Of a DNA stretch of 64,000 bases, positions 29,233-44,075 are shown in pieces. The notes beneath the pieces are model-generated. The model searched no databases. It saw only the letters and a list, made by a program, of their open reading frames with translations, and was not told the origin of the DNA. The first letter of the stretch is position 1. Each line of letters opens with the position of its first letter. Where the stretch lies: IMG/VR virus record IMGVR_UViG_3300023202_000383, positions 1 through 64,000 of that record; one strand, 5' to 3'. The translations under genes and the position numbers were made by a program.

Positions 29233-29991
29233 ATGGCTAGAGAGTTCTTTGATACTGTTGCTACTAAAGCTGGTTTGGCTGGCGAATATGAAGAACTAAT
29301 TGAGTCTGAATTCGCCGCCTCGGCTGGACCAGCGTATACGCCCGGCGAAGATGGAATTTTTAGGGTAGTTGCCTCTAGGACAATTCAGTTATTGAAGGGT
29401 AGTCCAATCTATGTGGAGACTTTTCAGGACTCTGCTGCCACCCTACGAGTTCCGTCTGGGCTAATAGCAAGCAATGATGCCAACGATGGTAGATTTTATT
29501 TTGTCAAGAACAGCGGAATTGGGAATGTTGCATTACAAGATCACTTAGGTGGATCTTTGGCGGCAATCCGTAAAGGTCAATTTGTTGTTGCCCTACATGG
29601 AGATGATGATAATTGGGATGCTTCTGGGTTGCTTAGTTCCGACGCCGTCGTCGAAGTCAAGAACACGTTGACGACCACGGACACACTGCTGAACACGATC
29701 GCCACGATCGACGTCGACCCCAGCACCGTACACCATCTGGACGTGACGATCACGGCGCGGGAGGGCGACAATAATAGAGGGTCGTTCGTGCGTAAGGCCA
29801 CGATTTACCGTAATTCGACGGGCGGGGCAGCAATCGAGAATAACGTAATCGTGGTATTTGACGAGAGCAGCAGCGGTAACTTTAAGATAGCTGTCGTGGC
29901 GAGCGGCAACAGCATACTCATTCAGGTTCAGGATGAGCAGGGGCAAACGGTGAACTGGACCAGTTGGCACAAACTCTACTCACAGGCGTGA
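29233..29991 (+). CDS. putative fibre/structural protein, chimeric (AT-rich 5' half, GC-rich 3' half)
   Basis: Codon composition switches abruptly near 29640 with no break in frame. Confidence 0.65.
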   Translation: MAREFFDTVATKAGLAGEYEELIESEFAASAGPAYTPGEDGIFRVVASRTIQLLKGSPIYVETFQDSAATLRVPSGLIASNDANDGRFYFVKNSGIGNVALQDHLGGSLAAIRKGQFVVALHGDDDNWDASGLLSSDAVVEVKNTLTTTDTLLNTIATIDVDPSTVHHLDVTITAREGDNNRGSFVRKATIYRNSTGGAAIENNVIVVFDESSSGNFKIAVVASGNSILIQVQDEQGQTVNWTSWHKLYSQA

Positions 29992-29992
29992 C

Positions 29993-30634
29993 ATGATTAC
30001 CGGCATCACACAATTCGGGTTGGAGGGGCGTGTAGCAACGGTGGATCACGACCCGGCTATCGTGTCGACCGATGTCCCCGCAGGTTCGATTATCCTGTCG
30101 ACCTCCACAGGATTGCTCTACCGAAAACTCACCGGCGGCAGCAACACGGATGTGTTGCCGATGACCGCTTCCAGTCAGCCGTTCGATTGGGACAGCGGGG
30201 CGTCGGCGGTCGCGGCGGTCGTCGCGGCCGGGATGCTGTCGCTCGAATTGCTTGCCGATACCGACTCGAAGGTAGTCGGCGGCGACGTTGCCCCGCTGCA
30301 CGTCGACCTCGATCAGGCGTTGGAGCTTGACGTCAAGATCGTCACCCTCAGCTTGGGCGACGCGTCGGCCGACGCGCACCTGCGGCTGACGGCCCGCTAC
30401 GTGGGGTTGGGCGAGGCGGCGGACAAGACGCCCGACGAGACGATCGACCACATCTTTGAAGTCGCCAACGTAGATAAGTGCGTGCACGCCGTGACGTTCA
30501 CACTGGACCCGTCGCTTATCTCCCCCGAAGACCTGCTAAACCTGGAGCTGTCGCGGCTGGGCACGTCAGCGAGTGACGTGTTTACCGGCTCCATCGGCGT
30601 TGCCGAGAGGTCGCTGCTGAGGTTCTTTAACTGA
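29993..30634 (+). CDS. putative structural (beta-rich) protein in GC island
   Basis: Coupled to neighbours; high GC3. Confidence 0.65.
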   Translation: MITGITQFGLEGRVATVDHDPAIVSTDVPAGSIILSTSTGLLYRKLTGGSNTDVLPMTASSQPFDWDSGASAVAAVVAAGMLSLELLADTDSKVVGGDVAPLHVDLDQALELDVKIVTLSLGDASADAHLRLTARYVGLGEAADKTPDETIDHIFEVANVDKCVHAVTFTLDPSLISPEDLLNLELSRLGTSASDVFTGSIGVAERSLLRFFN

Positions 30635-31164
30635 TGGCAAGCACGTACGAACTGATACTGTTCCGCGAGGAGACCCGAGACGACGGGAAGGTGGCGTTGC
30701 TGCGTATCCCGTTGGTGGCCGGTGCGGGGATCGACCTCGACGCGGTGATCGGGGAGGTATCCGCCGGTAGCGGTGTGAGCGTGCAGGAGGGATACGCCGA
30801 GAGCGAAGGGACCAGTTCGACGACCAGCACCAACTTTCAGCAAAAGCTCCGCGCCAGCTTGACGGGTCTAGACGCCGGTACGTATGAGGTGGCGTGGTCT
30901 TGTGAGGTGTTGCCCGGCAAAAACAATCTGGCTGCCCGCGTGCGGGTTCAAGTGGATGACACGACGACGCTAAACAGCCCTGACCCGGTCCTCAATCGAG
31001 ACAATAGCGGGGGCAACGTGAAGGGCTGGATGCCTCTCAGTGGGTTCCGTCAATTGGCATTGAGCGCCGGGGATCATGACTTCGACATCGACTTTGCTTC
31101 ACCTCAGAACGGAAAGTCAGTAGATATCCGGTTTGCGCGTATCAAAATAGCGAGGACAAATTAA
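30634..31164 (+). CDS. putative structural/fibre-tip protein in GC island
   Basis: TGATG coupling; beta-sandwich-like composition. Confidence 0.65.
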   Translation: MASTYELILFREETRDDGKVALLRIPLVAGAGIDLDAVIGEVSAGSGVSVQEGYAESEGTSSTTSTNFQQKLRASLTGLDAGTYEVAWSCEVLPGKNNLAARVRVQVDDTTTLNSPDPVLNRDNSGGNVKGWMPLSGFRQLALSAGDHDFDIDFASPQNGKSVDIRFARIKIARTN

Positions 31165-32106
31165 GTGGCCGAGCAAGCATACACGTACAGCATCGCCAGC
31201 GACTTCCCGTCGGGCGCGGTCAACACGCAGAAGCTGCACGACGAGGTCGTGGCCGACACGGCGATCACGACGCAGCTCGACCGCATCGACACCGACGGCG
31301 ACGGCTTGTCAATCGTGTTTCAGGCGGCGCTGTCGGCGGCGGAGAAGACGGCGCTGGACGGCGACACGACCGGACCGGCCGGGGGGCTGATCGCGCAGCA
31401 CGACAACAGCGCGTCCGCCCCCGACTACGGGAAGATGCAGATCGACGGGATCTCCCCGGACGCCAACGGCTCGCTGCCGCAGGCCCCGATCATCTCCACG
31501 CCGGGCCACCGGCTCAACGACCGCGACGTGCTGGTGCGGGTGGGCGAGTTCGACAACCCGTTCGAGGACCTGCGGGTCAACCCCGACGACAACAAGGAAG
31601 TGGCGTGGGGCGAGGTCACGTGCGACCCGGCCGACACCGATCCGGCGAACAAGACCGGGGTATTCAAGCTCGACGGCAACGGCGACTGGGTCCGCTGCAC
31701 CGACCAGACCGACGCGGCCGCCAACGCCGGGCTCACGGTCCTGGAGTACCAGGCCCGGCAGGGCGGCGTGGCCGGGGGCGATGCGCTCAAGTACGACGTG
31801 CGGGGCGGGACGCTGTGGGTCGACTCCAACGTGCCGGACGACGGCGACCGCTGGTCGCACCGCGTCTATTCGGTCGGTGCCCCGGACCTGTCGGCCGTCC
31901 TCGGCGGCCGGGTGCCGTTCTTCGACGGTTACCTGTTTCCCTATCGCAACAACTGGATGCAGACGCTCAATCCCGTGGCGTTCCCGATGGATCCGTCGGC
32001 GTCGGCGGCGGCGAGCATCGTCCGCGTGTGGTTCTATTACAAGGCGGGCACGGCGTACGAGCACGTGCTGCGGTTCCACCTGTACCGACCGACCGGAAGC
32101 TGGTAG
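31165..32106 (+). CDS. putative structural protein in GC island
   Basis: GTG start directly after the upstream stop; very high GC3. Confidence 0.7.
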   Translation: MAEQAYTYSIASDFPSGAVNTQKLHDEVVADTAITTQLDRIDTDGDGLSIVFQAALSAAEKTALDGDTTGPAGGLIAQHDNSASAPDYGKMQIDGISPDANGSLPQAPIISTPGHRLNDRDVLVRVGEFDNPFEDLRVNPDDNKEVAWGEVTCDPADTDPANKTGVFKLDGNGDWVRCTDQTDAAANAGLTVLEYQARQGGVAGGDALKYDVRGGTLWVDSNVPDDGDRWSHRVYSVGAPDLSAVLGGRVPFFDGYLFPYRNNWMQTLNPVAFPMDPSASAAASIVRVWFYYKAGTAYEHVLRFHLYRPTGSW

Positions 32107-32888: not shown

Positions 32889-33529
32889 CACTAAAATATT
32901 TAGTGGTTGGGACTGGCAGATGTGGTACTGGCTATATATCAAAATCGTTTGATAAAATTGGCATCCCATGTGGGCATGAAGAAATATTTAGCTTAACTAG
33001 AGTTAAACGCATAGATAACTTAAGAGTCAAAGAAAATCTAAATAAGTCCAAAAAAGAAGCCGAGTCAAGTTGGCTAGCCGTTCCGTGGTTAGATAATTAT
33101 GTGATAATACCGGAAGATTGTAAGATCATTCATATAACTAGACATCCAAAGGATACCATAGAATCACTTTTAGACACTGGAATGTTATCTAGATATGACA
33201 ATAAATATACACAATTTGCGTTTAGAAATATGCCGAGGATGAGGCCGGAGTATGACCCTATTATAAATTGTGCTATTTGGTACGTTTGGTGGAACAGGAA
33301 AATAGAAAACACAACCAGAAATGTAATAAGGCATAAAGTAGAAGACGATATAACTAATTTGTTTGATAGAATAGGACTGCCACACAATAATAAGCTATTT
33401 AATAACACTAAATATAATAGCAGGGTATCTAAAAAGAGAAGACAAGTAGATCTCAAGGAAGAACTTAGCGGGAAACCGATATTAAAATATTTATTGAGCA
33501 TGGCAAGCGAATATGGATATGAAATGTGA
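32885..33529 (+). CDS. P-loop sulfotransferase-like protein
   Basis: VVGTGRCGTGY, GHEE, IIHITRHPKDTIES. Confidence 0.7.
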   Translation: MTLKYLVVGTGRCGTGYISKSFDKIGIPCGHEEIFSLTRVKRIDNLRVKENLNKSKKEAESSWLAVPWLDNYVIIPEDCKIIHITRHPKDTIESLLDTGMLSRYDNKYTQFAFRNMPRMRPEYDPIINCAIWYVWWNRKIENTTRNVIRHKVEDDITNLFDRIGLPHNNKLFNNTKYNSRVSKKRRQVDLKEELSGKPILKYLLSMASEYGYEM

Positions 33530-33702
33530 AAGACGTCGGCAAAGCCAAACTGGAATCAGAGAAAGCTTTAACTGAGTATCTAAAATGCCAGCAAGAACTG
33601 CTGGTAATGATCAATAAACAAATGGATCTGGGAAGAATCTACGCTGAGAAGAGAGCCGAATATTTGGCTTTGAAAGAAGATAATGAGCCAGGAATTGATT
33701 AA
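33526..33702 (+). CDS. small helical hypothetical protein (58 aa, absent from the ORF track)
   Basis: GTG overlapping the upstream TGA; open to TAA at 33702. Confidence 0.45.
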   Translation: MKDVGKAKLESEKALTEYLKCQQELLVMINKQMDLGRIYAEKRAEYLALKEDNEPGID

Positions 33703-35327
33703 GGTTTCAATATAAATTTATAATGTCCAGCATCCCACAGTCTTCTATATTTATTATTAAACATATTTTCGGCCTCGGTAAGACGCGAGTCGAAATTTTC
33801 TAGTAATTTTGATAATTTGTGTTTTTGAAAGTGTTGGCGAGAATACAATATCGATGTGTTGCCGTCTTTATAATATTTATAATTTGGCTTAGTTAAACCG
33901 CATGGTTTGAATCCTAATTTTTTATATAAATTTCCTGTCGAATATCTTGCGTCTGCATATGTTAAAATTGATTTTGGGTCATGTAATGCTATAAAATGAT
34001 TTAGTAGTTTTCCTGCTCCCCCGATAGCTGTTGAACCTATAGCTTGTGCGTATCTTATTATTTCCCATTTATATTTATGGTGCTTGGCAAAAGACATGCA
34101 TGCGACTAATTCTCCATTATATGTTAATCCAATTCTTACCGATGCATCCCGCGATCCATATATATGGTTTTCAGTCATAAATGAATCGTAATCTTTTGTG
34201 TTCAACGATATTATTTTACATTTTCTGGCGTATAATTTTGATGAATACCCAAGTTTATGATTTATTATTGATTTGACTATATTTTGTTTGTTTGACCATT
34301 CGTCCTCGTTTATTTGCAGAAGTTGTATATTGTTTTCTACGCATCTAGTATGTTTAGCTTGATGTTTAAATCTTTCGTCTTTTGATTCAGTATGGTTGTA
34401 TGAATGGTAATATAACCCATTATATTCGATAGCTACGTTATGATTTGGCAGATAGATATCGATTTCTAATGGATATATTGTCTTTCTATCGTTAATAATA
34501 TATTCAGTATTTATCGATTTTATATATTCTATTATTTCTTGGTGTGGTTTAGAAATCGAGTTAGAGCATTTAGGGCATCCGTGTCCGTTTAAATGATTAC
34601 TTACTGTTTGGGAAAAATTGCCGTGTATGATACATGTTATTGTGATTGGTTCCATGTACCCGCTGTAATTGGATTTGTCATATGAATATTTGTCGCCGTG
34701 GATCGATATTGCTCTATTTATTATATCTTCTGTTGTAGGTGTGTTTATTGCACATTTAGGGCAACCGTGGCCTTCGAGGTGCCTTCTGGTTAATTGTTTA
34801 AATTTGCCATGTTTCGGGCATTTTATTATTATGTGACTTCGATATGATTTATATATCGAATCGCTATAATCATATTTGTTATTGTGTAATTTTGATGATT
34901 TATTTATAAAATCGTCAATTGTATTACTTAAATTTTTTATTCCGCATAATTTGCACCCATACTTTCCGTAGATGTGTGATTTTGGTGTTTGTTCGAATTC
35001 GCCGTGTTCTGGGCATATTATTGTGATTTTTGTATAGCTATTGACATACTCAGATTTACTATAATCATACTTATCGCCGTGCACTAATGTTGCTTTTTCT
35101 ATAAATTTATTTAGTGGCAATTTAAGATTTTGTTTTTGTTGTTGCCTAAAACATTTTTTGCATCTTGCGCCTTTTTTGTGATTTCTAGCGCGTTGTCTAA
35201 ACTCTCCGTGTTCCGGGCATATTATTGTGACGCGTCCGCTCAATTCAATTTCTGTAACCTTTGAATAGTCATACTTGTTATTGTGTATCAGGGATGATTC
35301 ATGTATAAAGCGTTGTAATTTATTCAT
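33699..35327 (-). CDS. Hef-like free-standing endonuclease: DUF723-type Zn repeats + Vsr/EDxHD nuclease + Mom/GNAT-like domain
   Basis: Four KYDYSK...ICPxHGxFxQ...CxxC repeats; EIDIYLPNHNVAIEYNGLYYH; GGAGKLL..LTYADARYS.G.LY..LGF. Confidence 0.8.
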   Translation of the reverse strand: MNKLQRFIHESSLIHNNKYDYSKVTEIELSGRVTIICPEHGEFRQRARNHKKGARCKKCFRQQQKQNLKLPLNKFIEKATLVHGDKYDYSKSEYVNSYTKITIICPEHGEFEQTPKSHIYGKYGCKLCGIKNLSNTIDDFINKSSKLHNNKYDYSDSIYKSYRSHIIIKCPKHGKFKQLTRRHLEGHGCPKCAINTPTTEDIINRAISIHGDKYSYDKSNYSGYMEPITITCIIHGNFSQTVSNHLNGHGCPKCSNSISKPHQEIIEYIKSINTEYIINDRKTIYPLEIDIYLPNHNVAIEYNGLYYHSYNHTESKDERFKHQAKHTRCVENNIQLLQINEDEWSNKQNIVKSIINHKLGYSSKLYARKCKIISLNTKDYDSFMTENHIYGSRDASVRIGLTYNGELVACMSFAKHHKYKWEIIRYAQAIGSTAIGGAGKLLNHFIALHDPKSILTYADARYSTGNLYKKLGFKPCGLTKPNYKYYKDGNTSILYSRQHFQKHKLSKLLENFDSRLTEAENMFNNKYRRLWDAGHYKFILKP

Positions 35328-35397
35328 AATAAAATATCTTTGATTACAGATAGATCCTCTGCATTGCGTGTTGTATTTTATATACATGGTTGACATA

Positions 35398-36747
35398 ATG
35401 AAATATAATGGTCCTACAGACTTTGCTCATCTTCATGTCCATACTTTATATAGTACGCTTGATGGGGTTCAATCTCCAGAAGAATTGTTTTCTACGTGCA
35501 AAGAAAGAGGATGGAGTGCGTTAGCCGTAACCGAGCATGGGACATTGGCATCAGTCCCAGACAATTATGCGGCTGCAAAAGAATACGGCGTAAAGTATAT
35601 AGTTGCTTGCGAAATTTATTACAATGATTATGAACCGACTAGGCAAGATCTTGTTAAAGAAGATGTTAAAATTCGCAAGCTAAAAGAAACCGACCCTAAT
35701 TTTTATTATAAAATGTCTAGAAATAGGCATTTAACAGTCCTTGCTAAAAACGATAAGGGTGTGGAGAACATAATAAAATTGACCACTCAAGCGTGGGAGA
35801 CTGGATTTTATTATAGGCCGAGGATATGGTTTGATAAATTAGATGAATATAGAGAGGGTTTATTGGTATTGAGTGGATGTTTAAATGGGCCTGTTTCTCA
35901 TGAGTTAAGACATGGGAATTTAAGGTCTGATGATATGAGAGGTGCATTAGACTATATACATAAATTCAAAGAAGTATTTGGCGATGATTATTTTGTAGAA
36001 TTGCAGATGCCTTGTCTTCCTGATTTTCCTGACCACAAAGTCTTCCGTGCATTAAATCATATAGCTAACAAGTACAATATACCGAAAGTTCTTACAAATG
36101 ACGCACATTATCTAAATCGTGAAGACTTTGAAATCCAGAAATTAATGATGGCTATATCCCAGGGTTTAACTGTTGATGATCCGAATCTGTTCCATGTAAA
36201 TAGTGATGAGCAATATCTTAAAACCAGAGCAGATCTATGGCACACATTTAAGACTGGGAAAGACGGCAAATATTGTGAATATGTGACTGATAGCGAATTT
36301 GAAGATATGTGCAACAACACATTGGTAGTTGCCGGTAAATGTGATAATTTCGAACCTGATTTGTCGTCGAAGGTTCCTACATTAGATAATGACGAGCAGA
36401 TCTTAAGAACCCTTGTGTACGATAGGCTTAAGCAAGAGGGATTCGATAAAGATGAAACTAAGTACAATATAGACAATAAAGAAGTTACTTATAGAGAACA
36501 AGCCGACATAGAATTGAATAGGTTTATTGAGAAGAATTTCGCCAGCTATTTCTTGATAACCAGAGATTTGGTGCAGTATAGTTTAGATAACGGTTGGCCT
36601 GTTGGACCGCGAGGTTCAGTTGGCGGCAGTCTAGTGTGTTATTTATTGGGCATAACCGAGTTGGATCCAATAAAATGGAATTTATCGTTTAACAGGTTTT
36701 TAAGCCCCTCGCGCGGAGGAAAGATGCTAAACATTAAGGCAGAATAG
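35398..36747 (+). CDS. dnaE: DNA polymerase III alpha, fragment 1 (PHP domain + N-terminal palm)
   Basis: HLHVHTLYSTLDG, TEHG, NDAHY, YFLIT, GPRGSVGGSLV, RFLSPSR, then stop. Confidence 0.9.
   Translation: MKYNGPTDFAHLHVHTLYSTLDGVQSPEELFSTCKERGWSALAVTEHGTLASVPDNYAAAKEYGVKYIVACEIYYNDYEPTRQDLVKEDVKIRKLKETDPNFYYKMSRNRHLTVLAKNDKGVENIIKLTTQAWETGFYYRPRIWFDKLDEYREGLLVLSGCLNGPVSHELRHGNLRSDDMRGALDYIHKFKEVFGDDYFVELQMPCLPDFPDHKVFRALNHIANKYNIPKVLTNDAHYLNREDFEIQKLMMAISQGLTVDDPNLFHVNSDEQYLKTRADLWHTFKTGKDGKYCEYVTDSEFEDMCNNTLVVAGKCDNFEPDLSSKVPTLDNDEQILRTLVYDRLKQEGFDKDETKYNIDNKEVTYREQADIELNRFIEKNFASYFLITRDLVQYSLDNGWPVGPRGSVGGSLVCYLLGITELDPIKWNLSFNRFLSPSRGGKMLNIKAE
36728..36746 (+). repeat. direct repeat flanking the inserted endonuclease gene (partner at 38604-38628)
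   Basis: TAAACATTAAGGCAGAATA here; the partner reads TAAACATTAAG-ATTAAG-GCAGAATA. Confidence 0.85.
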
Positions 36748-36777
36748 GTCTAATTCAGTTATAAGCAAATATATAAT

Positions 36778-38613
36778 ATGATAAATGTACAACGAAGCAA
36801 AGAAGTGTTTGGATTAAAAAGCATCAATAGGATTCCTAAAAAACAGAAAGTTATATGTAATTGTGATGTTTGTGGGGTTGAATCACGTATTACTAAGCAG
36901 CACCATTATATATGCAGCAAACGTGCTGGTTTATATAGATGTAAAGATTGTGGTAGAAAAGCCATGGCATCTAAAGTATCAAAAGCCATGATATCAAAAT
37001 GGCAAAACGACAAATACAAATCCAAGCAGATTGGCAGGACTCATAGCGATGAATTAAAGGAATATGCTAGGCAGAGAGCTATCAAATTGTGGAAAGATAA
37101 AGAATATGTGGCAAAGTATAATGCTGGGTTTGACCCGGCCAAGGCTAGAAAGAATCTAAAGGCCACCAGATCGGTTGCCAATAAAGCTGCATCGCTTGCT
37201 ATGGCTGATAAATGGCAGGAAAAAGAATATCGCAGTAAAATGTCAGATCAATCAGCTAAGCTATGGAGTAACGATTGTTATAGAAACAAAGTAATAAGTA
37301 GCCTCAAAAAACATTATTCGTCATTAGAAGTTTTAGATAGATGTTCAAATAGAGCGAAAAAATTGTGGAAGAATAATGATTATAGGGATAGGTGGTTCAA
37401 ATCATTTATGCAATCATTTGGCAATGAAAGGTTACACGAAATTTCATTACAAAGTGCCAAGAATTGGGGAGACCGAGAATATAGAGATAAAATAGAATCA
37501 CAATGGGACGATCAAAAACGTGCAGAAATGTCCGAAATATGTAAAGAATGGTGGACTGATGATAGGAGAGCTGAAGTTTCTGAGATTATGATAAGTAGGT
37601 GGTCGGACCCTAATTTTAGAAAGAAAACAATAAAAGCATTTATTGATTCATGGACTGAAGAACGCAGGCAGGCTGCTAAAGATTCATGGACTGAAGAACG
37701 CAGGCAGGCTGCGTCTGATAGATCCAGGAATTTGTGGAAAGATCCGAAATATGTTAGCAAGATGGTTGATATGATCGGGAGGCCGTCGTCTTTAGAAATT
37801 CAATTCGCCAGCTTATTGGATGATTATGGCATCGAGTACACGCAACAGTTCCATTTAGGGCCATATTTATTTGATTTTAAGGTCAACGATGTCTTAATAG
37901 AAATTAATGGCGATTATTGGCATAGATTGCCGAAGACAATATCAAAAGACAAGGCTAAAGCTACTTATGTTGAAAAACATTATCAGCAATATCAGCTTAA
38001 GTATTTATGGGAGCATGAATTTTATCAATTAGAAAAGATTAATAAATTTATTGAATTCAGTTTTGTTGGTTCTGACGTAGAAGAGGTTGATTTTTCAGAA
38101 TTAAAATTTGTTACTGATATAGATTATGATTCAATAAAATCGTTAATTGAGAAATATCATTATAAAGGAAGTATTGGTCGGGGTGGGGTGTATTATGGTG
38201 TTATATATCGTGGTAATTTGATCGCTGGGTCTGTTGTTGGGTCACCAACTAGGAATGTTGTTGGTGGCGAGTTGTTACGATTTGTTATACACCCACAGTA
38301 TCAGGTCAAGAATCTTGCATCGTGGTTTTTGAGTAGAATCTCAAAGCATGCTTTGAGAGATTATGATTTATTGTTTACATTTGCTGATCCGAATTTTAAC
38401 AATTACGGCACAATATATGAGGCTAGCGGCTGGGAATTTGCTGGCGAAACAAAATCAGATTATTGGTATGTTAGCGAAGACGGTTGGGTTATGCATAAAA
38501 AGACTTTATGGAATAGAGCAAAGAATTTATGTATGTCAGAAAGGTATTTTGCTGAGGTTTTTGGATATAATCGGGTATATGGGTTGCCAAAGAGAAAGTA
38601 TATTAAACATTAA
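36778..38613 (+). CDS. free-standing endonuclease: helical W-repeats + DUF559/Vsr-like nuclease + Mom-like GNAT domain
   Basis: PSSLE...FDFKVNDVLIEINGDYWH; ELLRF...NLASWFLS...TFADPNFNNYGTIYEASGW. Confidence 0.8.
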   Translation: MINVQRSKEVFGLKSINRIPKKQKVICNCDVCGVESRITKQHHYICSKRAGLYRCKDCGRKAMASKVSKAMISKWQNDKYKSKQIGRTHSDELKEYARQRAIKLWKDKEYVAKYNAGFDPAKARKNLKATRSVANKAASLAMADKWQEKEYRSKMSDQSAKLWSNDCYRNKVISSLKKHYSSLEVLDRCSNRAKKLWKNNDYRDRWFKSFMQSFGNERLHEISLQSAKNWGDREYRDKIESQWDDQKRAEMSEICKEWWTDDRRAEVSEIMISRWSDPNFRKKTIKAFIDSWTEERRQAAKDSWTEERRQAASDRSRNLWKDPKYVSKMVDMIGRPSSLEIQFASLLDDYGIEYTQQFHLGPYLFDFKVNDVLIEINGDYWHRLPKTISKDKAKATYVEKHYQQYQLKYLWEHEFYQLEKINKFIEFSFVGSDVEEVDFSELKFVTDIDYDSIKSLIEKYHYKGSIGRGGVYYGVIYRGNLIAGSVVGSPTRNVVGGELLRFVIHPQYQVKNLASWFLSRISKHALRDYDLLFTFADPNFNNYGTIYEASGWEFAGETKSDYWYVSEDGWVMHKKTLWNRAKNLCMSERYFAEVFGYNRVYGLPKRKYIKH

Positions 38614-38628
38614 GATTAAGGCAGAATA

Positions 38629-39015
38629 ATGGATAAGAATCAGATTAAGTTAGGAATAACATCTATACAGCGATCCGTTGTTGTGTGCAATAGGTTGGGG
38701 CTGTTTGAAGCAGCGTCGGCTGCTGTTTACAGTATGATAGATGCTATAAACGCTTTGGTAGAAGGCAACGAAGAAACTGCTGCTGAAGATTGTTTCAAAT
38801 CATCGTTTCTGATATATAAGGTTTTGTACGAATCATTTTCTGAAAAGTTTGAGAAGAGATCCAGTCTAGCGGAAGACGCGGAGAAAATTCTGAAAGAATC
38901 CAATGATTGGAATGCATTTGCAAAAGCGTCCAGTAATTATATGGATGCAATAGCAGAGGTTGTACATGGAACGGAATTCGAGGCCGAATTCTTGAAATTT
39001 AAAGTTGGCTCCTGA
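38629..39015 (+). CDS. hypothetical helical protein between dnaE fragments
   Basis: TAATG-coupled start. Confidence 0.65.
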   Translation: MDKNQIKLGITSIQRSVVVCNRLGLFEAASAAVYSMIDAINALVEGNEETAAEDCFKSSFLIYKVLYESFSEKFEKRSSLAEDAEKILKESNDWNAFAKASSNYMDAIAEVVHGTEFEAEFLKFKVGS

Positions 39016-39496
39016 TAAAATAGACATATATTGCTTTGCTAGAGGCAAGGATAGTCCATACGCATATGGCATCCTTGTGGTCGCACATTATGGCGAAGAG
39101 TGTAAAGAGCACGAGAAATTTGGTTTCGTAGATGCGAAAACGCCTACTGAGGCCAATATCAAGATAATATTGATGGCGTTGAAGTCCGTTAAAGATGACT
39201 TTAAGGACCTCGATATCACTCTTCATGTAAGAAAATCTGCATTTTATTGTGTTGATAGAACATCTTGGGGAACCTATAGAACAAAGCCAACCAGACATCA
39301 TAAACTGATAGGTGCGGTGAGAAGTTTGTTTGACGAGCTTCCTAATGCAAGATCAAAGATGATATTCTCCAAATACCAAAAGTATGCTAAAAGATGTATA
39401 AAAAAGTCTAGGAGCATGTTTCATGCGAAACGACGCGAGTTGGGACGATATAAAGGTGATAGCGGTCAAGGAGCTCGTCCAGAAAAAGCTACCTAA
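39005..39496 (+). CDS. RNase HI-fold protein, catalytic acidic residues lost
   Basis: IDIYCFA (for IYTDG), YGILV, TPTEANIKIILMAL, ITLHVRKS (for TDS). Confidence 0.5.
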   Translation: MAPDKIDIYCFARGKDSPYAYGILVVAHYGEECKEHEKFGFVDAKTPTEANIKIILMALKSVKDDFKDLDITLHVRKSAFYCVDRTSWGTYRTKPTRHHKLIGAVRSLFDELPNARSKMIFSKYQKYAKRCIKKSRSMFHAKRRELGRYKGDSGQGARPEKAT

Positions 39497-41192
39497 CGAG
39501 TATAAGTCTAGATTTAAGACAGAAATAAAAGAGATCGAAAAGCAAGGTGCCAATGCCTATTGGCAGCAGCTATATAACGAAGATCACAAATACGACACGA
39601 ATAACAATGGTTTGGTCTTGCCCTGGATATTAGGCATGACCGATGTTGATCCTTTAAAATCAGACCATCAATATACAAGGTCGACGGACTGGCCTGACAT
39701 AGATGTTGACTGCTTACCGACAGCCAGAGATAGGATCAAAGAATATGCTGCAGAGAAATATGGCAAAGACAAAGTCTGTAGCGTAGGGTTGTGGCAGACA
39801 TATAAATTTAGGTCAGCATTACAAGACTCTGTTAGAGGTGTTGGTGGTAATGTCAAAGAAATCATGGACATCACTAAGCAGTTGCCGGATGATGTTGACG
39901 ATCTGAAAGATGGTGGTTTTGCAAAGTGCACTGAATGTAAAACGAAGCATAATGAGCATAAATGCCCAGAATGTGGATCAACAGAAATAGATGGGATCAC
40001 ATTTGGGAAGGTGATAGAAGATCATGAAGAATTAAAGAAATATTATGGAGAGCATCCTAAAGAAGTCAATCTAGCCGTTAGAATGATAGGAAAAATAAAA
40101 GCGCTGGGTAAACACGCTGGCGGCCTTATTATATCTGATAGAGTGCTATTCGGAAATGTCCCTATGGGCGTTTCAAATGGCCATTGGACAAGTTTGTGGA
40201 CTGAAGGCAGGAGTACTCAATTATCTAAATTCGGGTATATTAAGTGGGATATGCTTGGCCTTAAAACTTTGCAGTATATTCATGAGTGCTGCAAATTAAT
40301 CAATAAAACCAGAAATTACAAGTTTAATGTTATTCCATGGAAAGGAATGGACCCATGGGAAAACTGTCTTGGATACTATTGGGATAATAATGGCGTAAAA
40401 CACAAAGTGAGGATGGATGACGAAAAAACCTTTGAGATGATGAACGCCATAAGGACCGATACAGTATTCCAATTCGACACGGCACTGCAGAAGAAGATTT
40501 TAGAAAATGGCGTAAACAGCTTTTATGATTTACAGATATTTAATGCAATGGGCCACCCAGGTCCGTTGCCAATGATCGATGAGTATGTAGCTCGACGTGA
40601 CAATGAGGACTACGATTGGAAGAGCGAGGAGCATCCTGATGTTGCATCGTTGCTTAAAGACACAAAGGGTATCATAGTATATCAGGAGCAATTGCAGAAG
40701 ATCTGGCAACATTTGGCTAAATTCACGGCTCCCGAAGCTGAATCTGCGAGGAAGGCTGTTGCTAAGAAATGGACGGAAAAACTAAAGCCTGTTGAGGAGA
40801 AGTGGGTAAGGGGCGCATCTAAGATAATGGGCGAGCGGCGGGCTAAAGATTACTGGGGGAAGATGAAAACTTTCGGTAGGTATGCCTTCAATAAATGCCT
40901 GGACAAAGATACTATATTAGAAGATCCTACAAATGGCAATACTATAACTGTTGAAGAGCTTTTTGAATCTAAATCGAGCTTTAAATTAGAATCTTATTGT
41001 GATGATGGATTTGTGGTCGATGACGTTGATGAGATAATCGAATGCGGTGAACAAGATATTTATGAAATAGAATTAGATAATGGGGCGATTCAGAAAGTCA
41101 CTTTGAATCATAAGTTTAGGTGCGATGATGGAAAATACTGGACAGTCAAAGAAATCATCGAAGGCAATTATTCCATCGTGGTTCGACCATAA
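39423..41192 (+). CDS. dnaE: DNA polymerase III alpha, fragment 2 (catalytic palm/fingers) fused to N-half of split intein (40896-41189)
   Basis: WPDIDVDC, GKHAGG, IKWDMLGLKTL, IVYQEQ, YAFNK|CLDKDT...KVTLNHKF. Confidence 0.9.
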   Translation: MRNDASWDDIKVIAVKELVQKKLPNEYKSRFKTEIKEIEKQGANAYWQQLYNEDHKYDTNNNGLVLPWILGMTDVDPLKSDHQYTRSTDWPDIDVDCLPTARDRIKEYAAEKYGKDKVCSVGLWQTYKFRSALQDSVRGVGGNVKEIMDITKQLPDDVDDLKDGGFAKCTECKTKHNEHKCPECGSTEIDGITFGKVIEDHEELKKYYGEHPKEVNLAVRMIGKIKALGKHAGGLIISDRVLFGNVPMGVSNGHWTSLWTEGRSTQLSKFGYIKWDMLGLKTLQYIHECCKLINKTRNYKFNVIPWKGMDPWENCLGYYWDNNGVKHKVRMDDEKTFEMMNAIRTDTVFQFDTALQKKILENGVNSFYDLQIFNAMGHPGPLPMIDEYVARRDNEDYDWKSEEHPDVASLLKDTKGIIVYQEQLQKIWQHLAKFTAPEAESARKAVAKKWTEKLKPVEEKWVRGASKIMGERRAKDYWGKMKTFGRYAFNKCLDKDTILEDPTNGNTITVEELFESKSSFKLESYCDDGFVVDDVDEIIECGEQDIYEIELDNGAIQKVTLNHKFRCDDGKYWTVKEIIEGNYSIVVRP

Positions 41193-41920
41193 AATTATAA
41201 GCTACAATGATAATATAAAAAGTAATGATACAATAAAATCAATATGTTCAATATGCGGCGATAAAACAAGTAGAAAATTTATCGAACATAAAAGGCTGTG
41301 CAATAGGCAATCAAGATATGTTAGCTCATATCGGTGCCGGTCTTGCCTGACAAAGTCAGATGATTACAAAATCAAAATAAAAAAAGCTGAATTCGACACA
41401 GATGCTATGAGTAAGAGGTCAAAAAAGCATTGGGCTAATTTATCAAAGCACGATCGTAAGGCATTAACTAGCAAGATAACAGCCAAATTAAGAACTGATG
41501 CTGTAAGAGAAAAAATTAGCAAGTCTATAAAAGAAAAATTTGACGATCCAGATTATATTCGTAAAGTTTCGGAGGCGAGAAAGAAATATTGGGAAAATTA
41601 TGAATATAGGAAAAATAGGACGTTATCGATAGATGAATTTATAGAGAGATCTAAGTCAGTTCATGGCGATAAGTATGATTATTCGAAAGTTCAATTCGAT
41701 TCTGCCAGGAATTCTAAAGTTGATATTATATGTCCAGATCATGGTGTCTTCCGACAAAGACCGTTATGGCATTATTTGTATGGTAATGGGTGCCCAGATT
41801 GTTAGACAAGAATTCCAAAAGCACAAACTTAGCGGTAAATTAGACAATTTTGATAGTAATTTGACTGAACTACAGAATATGTTCAATAATGGATATAGGG
41901 TGGGATGCTGGACACAATAA
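41125..41920 (+). pseudogene. internally deleted Hef-like endonuclease remnant between the intein halves
   Basis: ORF 41125-41805 has W-repeats and one DUF723 repeat, then stops; 41805-41920 in another frame reads RQEFQKHKL...LTELQNMFNNGY, the family's C-terminal end; nuclease and GNAT domains are absent. Confidence 0.7.
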
Positions 41921-41922
41921 AT

Positions 41923-43071
41923 ATGAATGGAAACGTAGCTAAAATAAAGTCTATAAAATATGTCGGTAAAAGAAGATCATACAACATATGTATGGAATCT
42001 AGCCAACATAATTATTTAATAAAACCATCTAGCGGGCAACCTATTCATAAAAATTCCCATAGCATAGGCTATATAACGGAGGCATATTGGTGTGCATGGT
42101 TAAAGGCTCACTTTCCGCCAGAATGGTGGGCGTCTGTTATGAGTTATTGCCACCATGTGAGACTCAAGAGATACATGAATGTGGCAAGGTCTGAGGGCGT
42201 TAAATTTGGTCCTATAAATATAGAGGACCTGTCACCATATTATTCAGTCGACCCAGAGACGCATAAAGTCACTCCTGGTCTTATAAGCATAAAGGGGATC
42301 GGCCAGAAAGCTGCAGACAAACTGTCTGGTAAAGGAAAGTATGATAATATAGATGATTTCGTGGATAAATTTGGAAAAGACAAAAGGGTGATGGAAAGAT
42401 TGATACTTCTTGGTGCTTTTCAGAAATACCACCCAAATATAAAAGCCACTTGGATTTGGTACCAATATAAATATTGTAGTGGCGCTGCCTCTAGAGAAAT
42501 CAAGAAGCACATTAAGTCTGAACTGCTGGCTGACTGGACCGATGAGAGAATTGAACAAGAACGCAAAAGACAGGCGGATGAATATTTTAAATTGTATCCA
42601 AATAGGCGTAAGCTTCCGAATAAGATAGCCAACTGGAATCCTAAGCCTGATGATACAAGAGAAAATGTTATGGCATTGATAGAAGACGATTATGCTAATG
42701 CCGAAAAATTCAATTTTGAAAAGGAATATCTAGGGTACTATTGGAGGAATCCAATAGAATATTTTAAGACTGATTCAGATAATACAATTATAAATGCCAA
42801 GAAGAATGGTGGGGGGTTCATAGATGTAGTGATAGAGTCTTTCGAAATAGCGGAGACTCGCAAAGGAGGATTATTCGGCAGGTTGGCAGTAATGGATGGC
42901 AGCACAGCCTGTAACGTATACATGTGGGAAGGCGAGCTCGATGCCTCTGAGAGCTTCATCGATGACGGGATAGGTATTAGACTAAATGTTGATTATAACG
43001 ACGGAAGAAGGACATTCTCAGTCAAGAGAGGATCAGTTCCTGTGATACTTGAGATGTCTGAGGACCAGTAG
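41923..43071 (+). CDS. dnaE: C-half of split intein (41923-42054) fused to DNA polymerase III alpha fragment 3 (HhH + OB)
   Basis: KIKSIKYVGKRRSYNI...IHKN|SHSIGY..AYWCAWLKAHFP; GLISIKGIG; EKEYLG. Confidence 0.88.
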   Translation: MNGNVAKIKSIKYVGKRRSYNICMESSQHNYLIKPSSGQPIHKNSHSIGYITEAYWCAWLKAHFPPEWWASVMSYCHHVRLKRYMNVARSEGVKFGPINIEDLSPYYSVDPETHKVTPGLISIKGIGQKAADKLSGKGKYDNIDDFVDKFGKDKRVMERLILLGAFQKYHPNIKATWIWYQYKYCSGAASREIKKHIKSELLADWTDERIEQERKRQADEYFKLYPNRRKLPNKIANWNPKPDDTRENVMALIEDDYANAEKFNFEKEYLGYYWRNPIEYFKTDSDNTIINAKKNGGGFIDVVIESFEIAETRKGGLFGRLAVMDGSTACNVYMWEGELDASESFIDDGIGIRLNVDYNDGRRTFSVKRGSVPVILEMSEDQ

Positions 43072-43593
43072 ATGTTAATTGATACAGACAAACTATGCTG
43101 TGATTATTGCGGGGAGATATTAGATGGGGATTTCTATTATTATTCGTTTGATTTTAAGGAAATAAATGTCCAAAACATGGCTGTGTCTGTAAAGGATGGC
43201 ATATTTAGTGCTGATGTATGCAATGATTGTATGGAATCCTACAAACAACGAGTAAAGCAAGCATATAAGCCACCTGACAAAGACGCAATATATTGTGACA
43301 TATCGGGCGAAAAATTGTCTGGCAATATATTATACTATTTGTGTATCATAACGCGCGTTGATGTGCGTTTTAGCGGAAAACTATATTACTGTGAAGTATG
43401 TAAACAAAATAAGAAAGTAAGTAACATCCCCTGTGAAGAATGCCCAGAAAATCACCAATTAACAAGAAATGCAGATGTCAAAAAAGATGAAGAGCATTTT
43501 GAATTTAATTTTAGCAAACAAATGTATGATTTGTTTGTAAATCATGTCGACATCATTAAGAAAAGAGGAATAGAAGAATGGGCGAAGATATGA
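43072..43593 (+). CDS. Cys-rich zinc-binding hypothetical protein
   Basis: Several CxxC pairs arranged as an internal repeat. Confidence 0.7.
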   Translation: MLIDTDKLCCDYCGEILDGDFYYYSFDFKEINVQNMAVSVKDGIFSADVCNDCMESYKQRVKQAYKPPDKDAIYCDISGEKLSGNILYYLCIITRVDVRFSGKLYYCEVCKQNKKVSNIPCEECPENHQLTRNADVKKDEEHFEFNFSKQMYDLFVNHVDIIKKRGIEEWAKI

Positions 43594-44075
43594 ATCCATA
43601 TAATATGTCTGAAATTAAAATAGAAGACGAGATCGTTCTAGGCAGGCCGGTCGAATGGGACTCCGAACCAGACAATGCAGACGGATCAAAATCTGATGGT
43701 ACCTATATTGAGCCAATTAAGTATGAGACTACATGTCCATATTGTGGGAGCTTAATTAGCTATGAGTCGAAATTTTTATCCGTGCAGTGCCAAGAATGTG
43801 GTAAGGGCGAGTTTGAAGAAAGAGATCCTGTTGACCACGAATCGCCAGTCGATCTAGATATTGAATTAACGGACATTGAAGGCGAAGAAGATGAAATCGA
43901 CACAGAAATTGATGGACAAGAAGAGAGCGAAGAGAATGAGGAAGAGGGAGGGTCAGAAGAGAAAGAAAATGCTGAAGATGAGAATGATCAAGAGATCGAT
44001 AAAAAGGGCGACGAAAGAGAGAATAATGAGGAAGATGGAGAAGAAATAGATATCGATAAGCTTTTAGAAGATTGA
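43578..44075 (+). CDS. zinc-ribbon protein with acidic tail
   Basis: CPYC...CQEC; E/D-rich C-terminus. Confidence 0.65.
   Translation: MGEDMNPYNMSEIKIEDEIVLGRPVEWDSEPDNADGSKSDGTYIEPIKYETTCPYCGSLISYESKFLSVQCQECGKGEFEERDPVDHESPVDLDIELTDIEGEEDEIDTEIDGQEESEENEEEGGSEEKENAEDENDQEIDKKGDERENNEEDGEEIDIDKLLED

What the first reader, a model, noticed from the sequence alone, without database searches (positions are those of the whole stretch)
35398..41192. DnaE active site split between two genes with no intein, bridged by a duplicated helical segment
Seen: fragment 1 ends just after GPRGS...RFLSPSR with no intein motif. About 2.7 kb and three ORFs later, fragment 2 starts with a degenerate second copy of the same segment (RFKTEIKEIEKQG..AYW...LVLPWILGMTDVDPL vs IELNRFIEKNFASYF...LVCYLLGITELDPI) before the catalytic PDIDVD. 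Known: in bacterial DnaE the GRGS/RF..ER triphosphate-binding residues and the DxD aspartates lie on one continuous palm. Inference: the polymerase assembles non-covalently, possibly by domain swapping through the duplicated segment, giving a three-gene replicase.
Basis: partly seen in the sequence, partly recalled or inferred. Interest (0 to 1): 0.75.

Follow-up and report, generated by a model that had tools for sequence, protein, structure and literature searches.

The report
Clade-wide intein-less two-gene split DnaE polymerase
This jumbo phage and hundreds of uncultured relatives encode their DnaE-type replicative DNA polymerase as two proteins cut through the catalytic palm with no intein, each keeping a complementary, partly decayed copy of the same ~80-residue segment, so the active site is probably built across two subunits.

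Summary
Fragment 1 (35398-36747) covers E. coli Pol III alpha residues 82-396. It ends 10 residues after RFLSPSR, with no intein. Fragment 2 (39423-41192) opens with a second, degenerate copy of alpha ~319-396 before PDIDVD. That copy lacks exactly the GPGRG and FLNPE stretches that fragment 1 keeps invariant.

The split is old, not a local accident. More than 100 fragment-1 homologues (about 430-530 aa; about 440-510 apart from four that end in an intein half; 53-68% identical) share its C-terminal tail, apart from those four. More than 100 fragment-2 homologues start at the same point. Six related contigs were mapped, five with DNA in hand, and all show the same layout.

Two of the three intervening ORFs are conserved genes: a helical protein and an RNase H-like protein that lacks two catalytic Asp. 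The third, the 611-aa homing endonuclease, is a secondary insertion flanked by a duplicated copy of the fragment-1 3' end.

No intron was detected. Contigs from three DNA runs confirm the assembly.

A complex model scores ipSAE 0.88, against 0.00 for the best control, and both duplicated segments lie in the interface. The fragment 2/3 break is a known "fractured gene" (split intein plus a decayed endonuclease gene).

Non-covalent assembly is well supported computationally. Domain swapping is untested. I rate this a new variant of a known kind.

The parts
35398..36747 (+). DnaE fragment 1 (449 aa): PHP domain plus the dNTP-binding first half of the palm
   Evidence: Pfam PHP and DNA_pol3_alpha 8-98/260. 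phmmer to E. coli alpha 82-396. The AF2 model has pLDDT 93 and superposes as one body on Taq alpha 5-461 with Z 36. All nine canonical PHP metal-ligand positions (assigned from my own knowledge) are invariant or nearly invariant.
36400..36744 (+). Fragment 1 copy of the duplicated segment (residues 335-449). It keeps the GS motif (RGS at 36610-36618) and RFLSPSR (36694-36714), then the tail GGKMLNIKAE.
   Evidence: Invariant R405 G406 S407 G410 S411 S430 R433 R439 G440 G441 in 115 sequences. The tail has pLDDT 69 then 47 in the single-chain model, yet all of residues 432-449 are in the predicted interface.
36716..36747 (+). Left copy of a short direct repeat (the 3' end of fragment 1)
   Evidence: Repeat family D13 and reading. 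The right copy at 38592-38631 ends in ...GCAGAATAATG, i.e. the fragment-1 stop overlapping the start of the next gene.
36778..38613 (+). Free-standing homing endonuclease gene (611 aa; repeats, an endonuclease-like stretch, Mom/GNAT-like C-terminus), a secondary insertion
   Evidence: phrog_3339 homing endonuclease, phrog_1384 and Pfam Mom. No counterpart lies in the fragment 1/fragment 2 gap of the six related contigs. Flanked by the duplicated fragment-1 3' end.
38592..38631 (+). Right copy of the direct repeat, with the relic stop/start overlap TAATG
38629..39015 (+). Conserved small helical protein (128 aa), function unknown
   Evidence: 28% identical to the 115-aa ORF at the same place in L004, E=6e-10. 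Aligns with counterparts in L010, L008 and L003. No family found.
39005..39496 (+). Conserved RNase H-like protein (163 aa) without the first and third catalytic Asp
   Evidence: ESM Atlas features score 0.93 to RNase H clusters, with ten of the ten best hits in one family or clan. Homologous to the ORF just upstream of fragment 2 in L004, L010, L008 and L003. By my reading of alignment A3 against the E. coli RNase HI motifs (from my own knowledge), the D10 and D70 equivalents are replaced in all five.
39423..41192 (+). DnaE fragment 2 (589 aa): degenerate second copy of the segment, then the metal-binding palm, thumb with a 4-Cys insert, fingers, and the N-half of an intein
   Evidence: Pfam DNA_pol3_alpha 11-260/260 and finger. 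phmmer to E. coli alpha 319-466 and 468-758. AF2 model pLDDT 91.3. AGGAG lies 8 nt before the ATG.
39423..39677 (+). Fragment 2 copy of the duplicated segment (residues 1-85). It is helical and lacks the GS loop and the RF..R motif.
   Evidence: The alignment to E. coli alpha shows 5-residue gaps exactly at GPGRG and FLNPE. E34, Q41 and L64 are invariant; Y27, R30, E37, K40, G42, W47, N60, P67, D76 and P77 are nearly so. pLDDT is 87-97. Predicted-interface residues are more conserved than the rest, 0.77 against 0.46, p=4e-6.
39696..39710 (+). Catalytic DxD (D92, D94; also D96). The third carboxylate D276 and K274 lie further on.
   Evidence: Invariant D92 D94 D96 K274 D276. Aligned to the E. 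coli PDFDVD stretch.
40899..41192 (+). N-terminal half of a split intein (starts CLDKDT, block B TLNH)
   Evidence: NCBIfam intein_Nterm at 492-566, E=9e-5, and Pfam Intein_splicing E=3e-4, both below their cut-offs. Extein homology stops at AFNK, residue 491-492.
41125..41920 (+). Decayed homing endonuclease gene between the intein halves (a 226-aa ORF plus an out-of-frame C-terminal relic)
   Evidence: phrog_681 endonuclease, positions 184-428 of 576. A 32-aa stretch of the ORF at 41663-41920, in another frame, is 75% identical to residues 520-551 of the intact endonuclease at 33699-35396.
41905..43071 (+). DnaE fragment 3 (388 aa): C-half of the split intein (41905-42054, ends HKN, next residue S) and the C-terminal part of DnaE with HhH
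   Evidence: Pfam HHH_6. NCBIfam and PHROG DnaE matches start at residue 50 and continue the profile positions where fragment 2 stops: 751 and 793.

Best explanation
The replicative C-family polymerase of this roughly 256-kb phage is a heteromer of two polypeptides.

**Division of labour.**
- Fragment 1 carries the PHP domain, probably an active proofreading exonuclease. It also carries the first half of the palm, with the triphosphate-binding GS loop and the RF..R motif.
- Fragment 2, trans-spliced to fragment 3 by a split intein in this genome and a single gene in many relatives, carries the three catalytic carboxylates, thumb, fingers and the C-terminal DNA-binding parts.
- The active site is therefore composite: dNTP-binding residues come from one chain and metal ligands from the other.

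**The duplicated segment.** Both chains keep a version of alpha ~319-396. Fragment 1's version is the working, canonical one. Fragment 2's version has lost exactly the two motif stretches but stays under purifying selection. I infer that it now serves as a docking surface for fragment 1. The invariant but intrinsically unordered C-terminal tail of fragment 1 would help hold the pair together.

**Likely origin.** Gene fission by partial duplication followed by complementary loss, in the ancestor of a large clade of uncultured phages.

**The intervening genes.** The two conserved small genes between the halves (a helical protein and an inactive RNase H-like protein) may be further subunits. The 611-aa endonuclease gene is a later intergenic invader.

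**Shown versus inferred.** Shown: the anatomy, the homology of the two copies, the clade-wide conservation and synteny, and the secondary nature of the endonuclease insertion. Inferred: assembly, the composite active site and the docking role.
For: **Homology and complementary loss.**
- The Pfam profile ranges overlap.
- Both fragments align to E. coli alpha 319-396, and the gaps in fragment 2 fall at GPGRG and FLNPE.
- hhalign of the two family profiles gives E=1.8e-5.

**Conservation.**
- 989 fragment-1-sized homologues have E<=1e-5. The best 120 are about 430-530 aa; apart from four that end in an intein half, they share the tail RFLSPSRGG.MLN.
- 2282 fragment-2 homologues were found. The best cover 99-100% of residues 1-492, with conserved N-termini.
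- The motif residues are invariant.

**Synteny.** Fragment 1, then 2-4 small ORFs, then fragment 2, in L003, L004, L006, L008, L010, L011 and one JGI contig without DNA.

**Distance from unsplit DnaE.** The nearest unsplit DnaE are only 38-41% identical, and their match to fragment 1 stops at residue 439-440.

**Tiling onto solved structures.** The fragment 1 model 7-442 superposes on Taq alpha 5-461 (Z 36). The best fragment 2 superpositions run 85-492 onto Taq 458-816.

**Complex model.** ipSAE 0.88 against a best control of 0.00. That mark was reached by 58 of 80 solved complexes and 2 of 110 mismatched pairs. The interface includes fragment 2 residues 33-73 and 82-98 and fragment 1 residues 381-449.

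**Other support.**
- The fragment 1 tail is disordered in the single-chain model.
- Interface residues of fragment 2's copy are the conserved ones.
- In some relatives an intein sits in the GS motif of fragment 1 (GPRG|C). Inteins typically sit in functionally essential motifs (general knowledge).
- No PolB was found in the 256-kb record.
Against: - Everything is computational. No transcript, protein or activity data exist, and no RNA run was listed.
- The complex score may reflect the model's memory of single-chain DnaE structures. It used unpaired alignments of my own making.
- No coordinates were returned, so the position of fragment 2's extra segment is unknown. Some superpositions with higher rmsd do place it near the canonical site.
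- Conserved columns and predicted interfaces are not independent, because the model saw the alignments.
- The record is estimated to be about 70% complete, so another polymerase could exist. A short PolA-like ORF lies at 53356-53952.
Confidence: 0.72

Rival explanations
1. Fragment 2/3 is a self-sufficient polymerase with its own, modified palm. Fragment 1 is a separate PHP exonuclease (proofreading) subunit whose palm piece is only a structural anchor and takes no part in catalysis.
For: Fragment 2 matches nearly the whole NTPase-domain profile, 11-260 of 260. It folds confidently on its own, N-terminal segment included. All PHP metal-ligand positions in fragment 1 are conserved.
Against: Fragment 2's copy lacks exactly the GPGRG and FLNPE stretches. 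Fragment 1 keeps RGS, R433 and R439 invariant across 115 sequences. The GS motif is a defining catalytic element of Pol-beta-like nucleotidyltransferases (established knowledge). Fragment 1 plus fragment 2 residues 85-492 tile the canonical enzyme without overlap.
Confidence: 0.15
2. The two reading frames are joined after transcription or translation (group I or II intron, an undetected intein, or ribosomal bypass), so a single-chain DnaE is made.
For: Phage genes are often interrupted by introns or inteins carrying endonuclease genes. One endonuclease gene lies in the gap, and a split intein is used 1.5 kb downstream.
Against: - No Rfam match at E<=1 in 33000-44000.
- No intein family at the junction.
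- The gap holds two protein-coding genes conserved across the clade, with overlapping stops and starts.
- Fragment 1 has a conserved tail and stop. Fragment 2 has a conserved N-terminus and a Shine-Dalgarno sequence.
- Joining the frames would give two copies of the same segment in one chain.
- No joined form appears in the DNA contigs.
Confidence: 0.03
3. The gene was recently broken by the homing endonuclease insertion and is decaying; the phage relies on another (its own or host) polymerase.
For: Homing endonuclease genes flank and interrupt the locus: 33699-35396, 36778-38613 and a relic at 41125-41920. The record is incomplete and has a PolA-like ORF.
Against: The split exists without any endonuclease gene in the fragment 1/fragment 2 gap of L003, L004, L006, L010 and L011. 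Both ends are conserved over sequences only 45-68% identical, with invariant catalytic residues. The endonuclease gene sits between genes and is flanked by a duplicated 3' end, not inside a reading frame.
Confidence: 0.02

Closest known systems
Split 'minimal' Pol III alpha of group 2.2 jumbo phages (Iyer et al. 2021, PMC7824862)
   Same: A phage Pol III alpha-type catalytic module predicted to be made of two separate proteins, an N-terminal NTP-binding part and a C-terminal Mg- and DNA-binding part. This is the same topological cut, between the GS motif and the DxD.
   Different: That version is minimal (no PHP or other DnaE domains), its genes are far apart, and it accompanies a family B polymerase. 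Here the architecture is full DnaE: PHP, fingers and HhH. The genes are neighbours with two conserved genes between them. No PolB was found. The two parts overlap by a duplicated segment. In the passages I read, that paper does not mention an overlap.
Fractured genes: split intein plus free-standing homing endonuclease gene (Dassa et al. 2009, PMC2677866), and the cyanobacterial split DnaE intein
   Same: The fragment 2/3 break is of this kind: intein halves on the two genes with an endonuclease gene between them. That paper lists three DnaE loci from ocean metagenomes.
   Different: The fragment 1/2 break has no intein halves and cannot be healed by trans-splicing. The endonuclease gene in the intein gap here is decayed.
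Genes in pieces made by a homing endonuclease insertion (Aeromonas phage Aeh1 nrdA/mobE); split gp43 PolB of some T4-related phages; two-gene PolB of Methanothermobacter (all three from my own knowledge, not checked here)
   Same: Essential replication enzymes encoded as two genes whose products assemble non-covalently without an intein.
   Different: In the Aeh1 case the endonuclease gene itself is the cause of the split. Here the split predates the endonuclease and is clade-wide, it lies in a C-family polymerase inside the catalytic palm, and the halves overlap by a duplicated segment.
Single-chain bacterial and phage DnaE (E. coli, Taq, M. tuberculosis DnaE1; Streptomyces phage Blueeyedbeauty gp60)
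   Same: Same domains in the same order and the same catalytic motifs. The models tile onto the solved structures. Cultured-phage homologues are one gene of 1064 aa.
   Different: Only 33-41% identical to fragment 1, one polypeptide, and no duplicated segment.

Membership tests
C-family DNA polymerase, DnaE type (Pol III alpha) | N-terminal PHP domain with metal ligands | tested here: met
   Pfam PHP E=1.8e-40. H11 H13 D22 H47 E72 H111 C161 D235 H237 are invariant or nearly invariant. Their assignment as ligand positions is from my own knowledge.
C-family DNA polymerase, DnaE type (Pol III alpha) | Pol-beta-like palm with a GS motif, DxD and a third carboxylate | tested here: met
   All are present and invariant, but on two chains: RGS, R433 and R439 in fragment 1; D92, D94 and D276 in fragment 2.
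C-family DNA polymerase, DnaE type (Pol III alpha) | Fingers and HhH C-terminal parts | tested here: met
   Pfam DNA_pol3_finger in fragment 2 and HHH_6 in fragment 3. NCBIfam PRK05673 positions 370-751 and 751-1055.
C-family DNA polymerase, DnaE type (Pol III alpha) | Catalytic core on one polypeptide | tested here: not met
   Two genes 2.67 kb apart here and about 0.8-1.7 kb apart in relatives. All whole-protein NCBIfam scores fall below the curated cut-offs.
Intein-split gene (fractured gene / cyanobacterial DnaE), for the fragment 1/2 break | Intein N-half at the end of the first gene and C-half at the start of the second | tested here: not met
   No intein family in fragment 1 or at the start of fragment 2. 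Fragment 1 ends GGKMLNIKAE, and fragment 2 starts with a DnaE-homologous segment.
Intein-split gene (fractured gene), for the fragment 2/3 break | Intein halves flanking a free-standing endonuclease gene; extein sequence continuous across them | tested here: met
   intein_Nterm at 492-566, E=9e-5, just under its cut-off. Cys1 and TxxH are read. Fragment 3 has ...HKN then S51, and DnaE profile positions resume exactly where fragment 2 stops. An endonuclease relic lies between. Splicing activity is not testable here.
Gene interrupted by a self-splicing intron | Ribozyme structure between the exons | tested here: not met
   No Rfam match at E<=1 on either strand of 33000-44000. The gap is filled by conserved protein genes.
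Genes in pieces caused by a homing endonuclease insertion | The endonuclease gene occupies the break wherever the break occurs | tested here: not met
   Relatives with the same break have no endonuclease gene in it. Here the endonuclease gene is flanked by a duplicated fragment-1 3' end.
Split minimal Pol III alpha of group 2.2 jumbo phages (Iyer et al. 2021) | Cut between the NTP-binding and Mg-binding subdomains | tested here: met
   The cut falls after RF..R and before DxD.
Split minimal Pol III alpha of group 2.2 jumbo phages (Iyer et al. 2021) | No PHP or other DnaE domains; distant genes; accompanies a PolB | tested here: not met
   PHP, finger and HhH are present. The genes are neighbours. 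No PolB was found in the record.

The most novel reading that the evidence does not exclude
A large, uncultured clade of big phages replicates with a C-family polymerase whose active site is assembled across two subunits. The overlapping duplicated segment would be a preserved fossil of gene fission by duplication and complementary loss, since recruited as the docking module. The two conserved small proteins encoded between the halves (a helical protein and a catalytically dead RNase H-like protein) would be new subunits of this replicase.
Probability: 0.4. Interest if true: 0.75.

Novelty: new variant of a known kind. Interest (0 to 1): 0.62.

Why it matters
- **Enzyme architecture.** Replicative polymerases are almost always single catalytic chains. 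A natural, stable cut between the nucleotide-binding and metal-binding halves of the DnaE palm would show that this active site can be assembled from two proteins.
- **Evolution.** It would give a rare, still legible example of how a gene splits (overlap, then complementary loss).
- **Annotation.** It defines a marker and an annotation rule for a widespread group of uncultured large phages, whose DnaE is otherwise called as fragments or pseudogenes.
- **Protein engineering.** It offers a naturally evolved split-polymerase pair.
- **New candidates.** The conserved small genes between the halves are candidates for unknown replicase subunits.

Tried and rejected
**Searches that found nothing useful**
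- Megablast and blastn of the locus against phage records: no match.
- Peptide-pattern scans of IMG/VR with both fragments: nothing.
- Rfam at E<=1 over 33000-44000: nothing, so an intron is rejected.
- RNA sequencing runs: none was listed, so splicing could not be tested on transcripts.
- Word-based homologue search for the 163-aa ORF: found only itself. Its relatives were taken from syntenic loci instead.
- Pfam, NCBIfam and PHROGs for the 128-aa and 163-aa ORFs: nothing significant.
- Promoter and terminator scan: counts at the level of shuffled sequence, not used.

**Cultured phages.** tblastn of fragment 1 and of two more distant fragment-1-like proteins found only unsplit genes at 33-38% identity, for example Blueeyedbeauty gp60.

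**Literature.** Six full-text searches found no description of a full-length DnaE split with an overlap. PHROGs does hold two fragment-1-sized families, phrog_7513 (461 positions, 'unknown function') and phrog_13169 (463 positions). Such proteins are therefore already catalogued but not interpreted.

**Explanations rejected**
- Recent breakage by the endonuclease.
- A pseudogene.
- An assembly error.

**Not attempted.** A phylogeny to decide whether fragment 2's copy arose by internal duplication or came from a second dnaE. About 70 columns at about 18% identity carry too little signal.

Full report
**Setting**

The window is the first 64 kb of a single 256.5-kb virus record. The record has 41% G+C and 35 tRNA genes, and its completeness is estimated at about 70%. 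It is a jumbo phage with no close relative among deposited phage genomes. Nucleotide searches found nothing, and protein identity to those genomes is at most 29-35%.

Fragment 1 (35398-36747, 449 aa) has a PHP domain and positions 8-98 of the 260-position Pfam DNA_pol3_alpha profile. Fragment 2 (39423-41192, 589 aa) matches positions 11-260 of the same profile plus the finger domain.

- Against E. coli Pol III alpha, fragment 1 covers residues 82-396 and stops after RFLSPSR plus ten residues.
- Fragment 2 residues 25-157 cover alpha 319-466, so alpha ~319-396 is represented twice.
- The two copies resemble each other weakly by BLASTP (E=0.015 over 24 aa).
- They resemble each other clearly as family profiles (hhalign E=1.8e-5, 71 collinear columns).

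The degeneration is complementary and precise. In the alignment to E. coli, fragment 2's copy has five-residue gaps exactly at GPGRG (the GS loop) and at FLNPE (the RF..R motif). Fragment 1 has both motifs but ends before the DxD strand.

Independent contigs from three DNA runs reproduce the stretch without a difference.

**The split is ancient and clade-wide**

- The fragment-1 search returned 989 homologues with E<=1e-5.
  - The best 120 are about 430-530 aa and 53-68% identical.
  - Apart from four that end in an intein half (next paragraph), they are about 440-510 aa and share the tail ...RFLSPSRGG.MLN....
- The fragment-2 search returned 2282 homologues. The best cover 99-100% of residues 1-492 and begin at the same point, with a conserved N-terminus.
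- In a library without length limits, the fragment-1-type proteins form a block at 45-59% identity.
- The score then drops to ordinary single-chain DnaE of 1100-1500 aa at 38-41% identity, whose match ends at residue 439-440.
- A few more distant ~400-460-aa proteins end at the same spot with a similar tail.

Six related contigs were mapped, up to 385 kb long, one of them without DNA. All show fragment 1, then two to four small ORFs, then fragment 2.

Some relatives carry an additional split intein in fragment 1, inserted at GPRG|C in the GS motif.

**Conservation points to function**

In 115 fragment-1 sequences the following are invariant: R405 G406 S407 G410 S411 S430 R433 R439 G440 G441. 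The nine PHP metal-ligand positions are invariant or nearly so.

In 111 fragment-2 sequences D92 D94 D96 K274 D276 are invariant. So are E34, Q41 and L64 inside the degenerate copy, and about ten more positions there are nearly invariant. The second copy is therefore maintained, not decaying.

**The gap**

*The 611-aa ORF (36778-38613).* It is a homing endonuclease gene (phrog_3339, Mom-like C-terminus).

- None of the mapped related contigs has an endonuclease gene in this gap.
- It is flanked by a repeat of the last ~25-30 nt of fragment 1 (36716-36747 and 38592-38631).
- The downstream copy preserves the relic ...GCAGAATAATG, which is the fragment-1 stop overlapping the start of the 128-aa ORF.
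- It therefore invaded an intergenic junction after the split.

*The 128-aa and 163-aa ORFs.* Both have homologues at the same positions in relatives (E=6e-10 and 2e-6).

- The 163-aa protein is RNase H-like by protein-language-model features (0.93).
- By my reading of the alignment, it lacks the first and third catalytic Asp in all five sequences.
- The 128-aa protein is helical and has no recognisable family.

**No joining mechanism**

Rfam finds nothing at E<=1. No intein signature lies at this junction. Fragment 2 has its own Shine-Dalgarno sequence and a conserved N-terminus. No RNA run was listed, so transcripts could not be examined.

**Structure**

- *Fragment 1.* Its model (pLDDT 93) superposes as one body on Taq alpha 5-461 and E. 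coli alpha 1-400 (Z 31-36). Its duplicated segment keeps the canonical place next to the PHP domain. Its last 19 residues are poorly ordered in the single-chain model (pLDDT 69 then 47).
- *Fragment 2.* The model of residues 1-492 (pLDDT 91) has confident helices at 7-20, 25-40, 44-52 and 65-69. The best rigid superpositions start at residue 85-86, opposite E. coli 394-397 or Taq 458. Its N-terminal 84 residues join only in poorer fits.
- *Tiling.* Fragment 1 plus fragment 2 from residue 85 onward tile the canonical enzyme, and fragment 2's first 84 residues are an extra element.
- *Complex.*
  - The prediction scored ipSAE 0.88 in three runs, against 0.00 for the best of three controls.
  - That mark was reached by 58 of 80 solved complexes and 2 of 110 mismatched pairs.
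  - About 294 contacts were predicted, including fragment 2 residues 33-73 and 82-98 and fragment 1 residues 381-449.
- *Conservation at the interface.* Within fragment 2's extra segment, the predicted interface residues are the conserved ones (0.77 against 0.46, p=4e-6).
- *Caveats.* The score may reflect the model's memory of single-chain DnaE. The alignments were mine and unpaired. No coordinates were returned.

**Fragment 2/3**

Fragment 2 ends in an intein N-half (CLDKDT..., TLNH). Fragment 3 starts with a 50-residue C-half ending HKN, followed by SHS. The DnaE profile resumes exactly where it stopped.

Between the two lies a decayed endonuclease gene. This is the 'fractured gene' arrangement of Dassa et al. 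2009. Many relatives have the same break, and many others have one 830-940-aa gene.

**Comparison and novelty**

The nearest precedent is Iyer et al. 2021. They predicted a minimal, PHP-less Pol III alpha in group 2.2 jumbo phages, split into NTP-binding and Mg-binding proteins encoded far apart, alongside a PolB.

The present case differs in four ways. It has the full DnaE architecture. The two genes are neighbours in a conserved four-gene module. The halves overlap by a duplicated segment. No PolB was found.

PHROGs already holds fragment-1-sized families, one labelled 'unknown function'. I found no paper that describes this arrangement. I rate it a new variant of a known kind.

Noticed in passing
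window 29900-32100: An island of 63-66% G+C in a genome of about 38-41% G+C. It holds four + strand ORFs (29233-32106) with no Pfam match. It may be a recent foreign insertion, and may be why the record is classed as a 'provirus'.
   Followed up: partly
window 33699-35396 (- strand): An intact 565-aa homing endonuclease gene lies directly upstream of fragment 1 in divergent orientation (phrog_559 E=4.5e-131, phrog_3339; DUF723 repeats). Its C-terminal half is homologous to that of the 611-aa endonuclease.
   Followed up: partly
window 39927-39974 (fragment 2 residues 169-184): A four-cysteine cluster (C169, C172, C181, C184), invariant in the family, sits in an insert of the thumb region that has no counterpart in the E. 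coli alpha alignment. It is probably a zinc ribbon.
   Followed up: no
L008 7909-10647; proteins P0028, P0032, P0042, P0043: In some relatives fragment 1 is itself broken by a split intein inserted at GPRG|C in the GS motif. A 329-aa ORF lies between the pieces, and an 87-aa gene carries the rest. DnaE is then encoded in four or more pieces. Other cluster representatives of 650-1245 aa match fragment 1 in two or three separate stretches. I read this as inteins inside the PHP part, but did not inspect the intervening sequence.
   Followed up: partly
window 37645-37712: A perfect 32-nt direct repeat at 36-nt spacing inside the 611-aa endonuclease gene (encoding DSWTEERRQAA twice). It is the only place where the independent contigs of the DNA runs break.
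   Followed up: no
window 53356-53952: A short PolA-like ORF (395-aa open frame) matches DNA_pol_A positions 151-379 at 38 bits, just over the cut-off. It is the only other polymerase signal found in the record.
   Followed up: no
genome C1 129258-154108 and 196366-206979 (outside the window): 35 tRNA genes lie in two clusters. One has anticodon TTA (it would read UAA stop codons) at 132690-132764 on the - strand, and one has an irregular anticodon loop.
   Followed up: no
L004, L006, L008, L010, L011 and the JGI contig: A gene with the Pfam Volactin family lies upstream of fragment 1, at distances from about 0.1 kb (L010) to about 6 kb (L006). Except in L008 and L011, a UDG gene lies a few genes downstream of fragment 2. 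The neighbourhood is syntenic across the clade.
   Followed up: no
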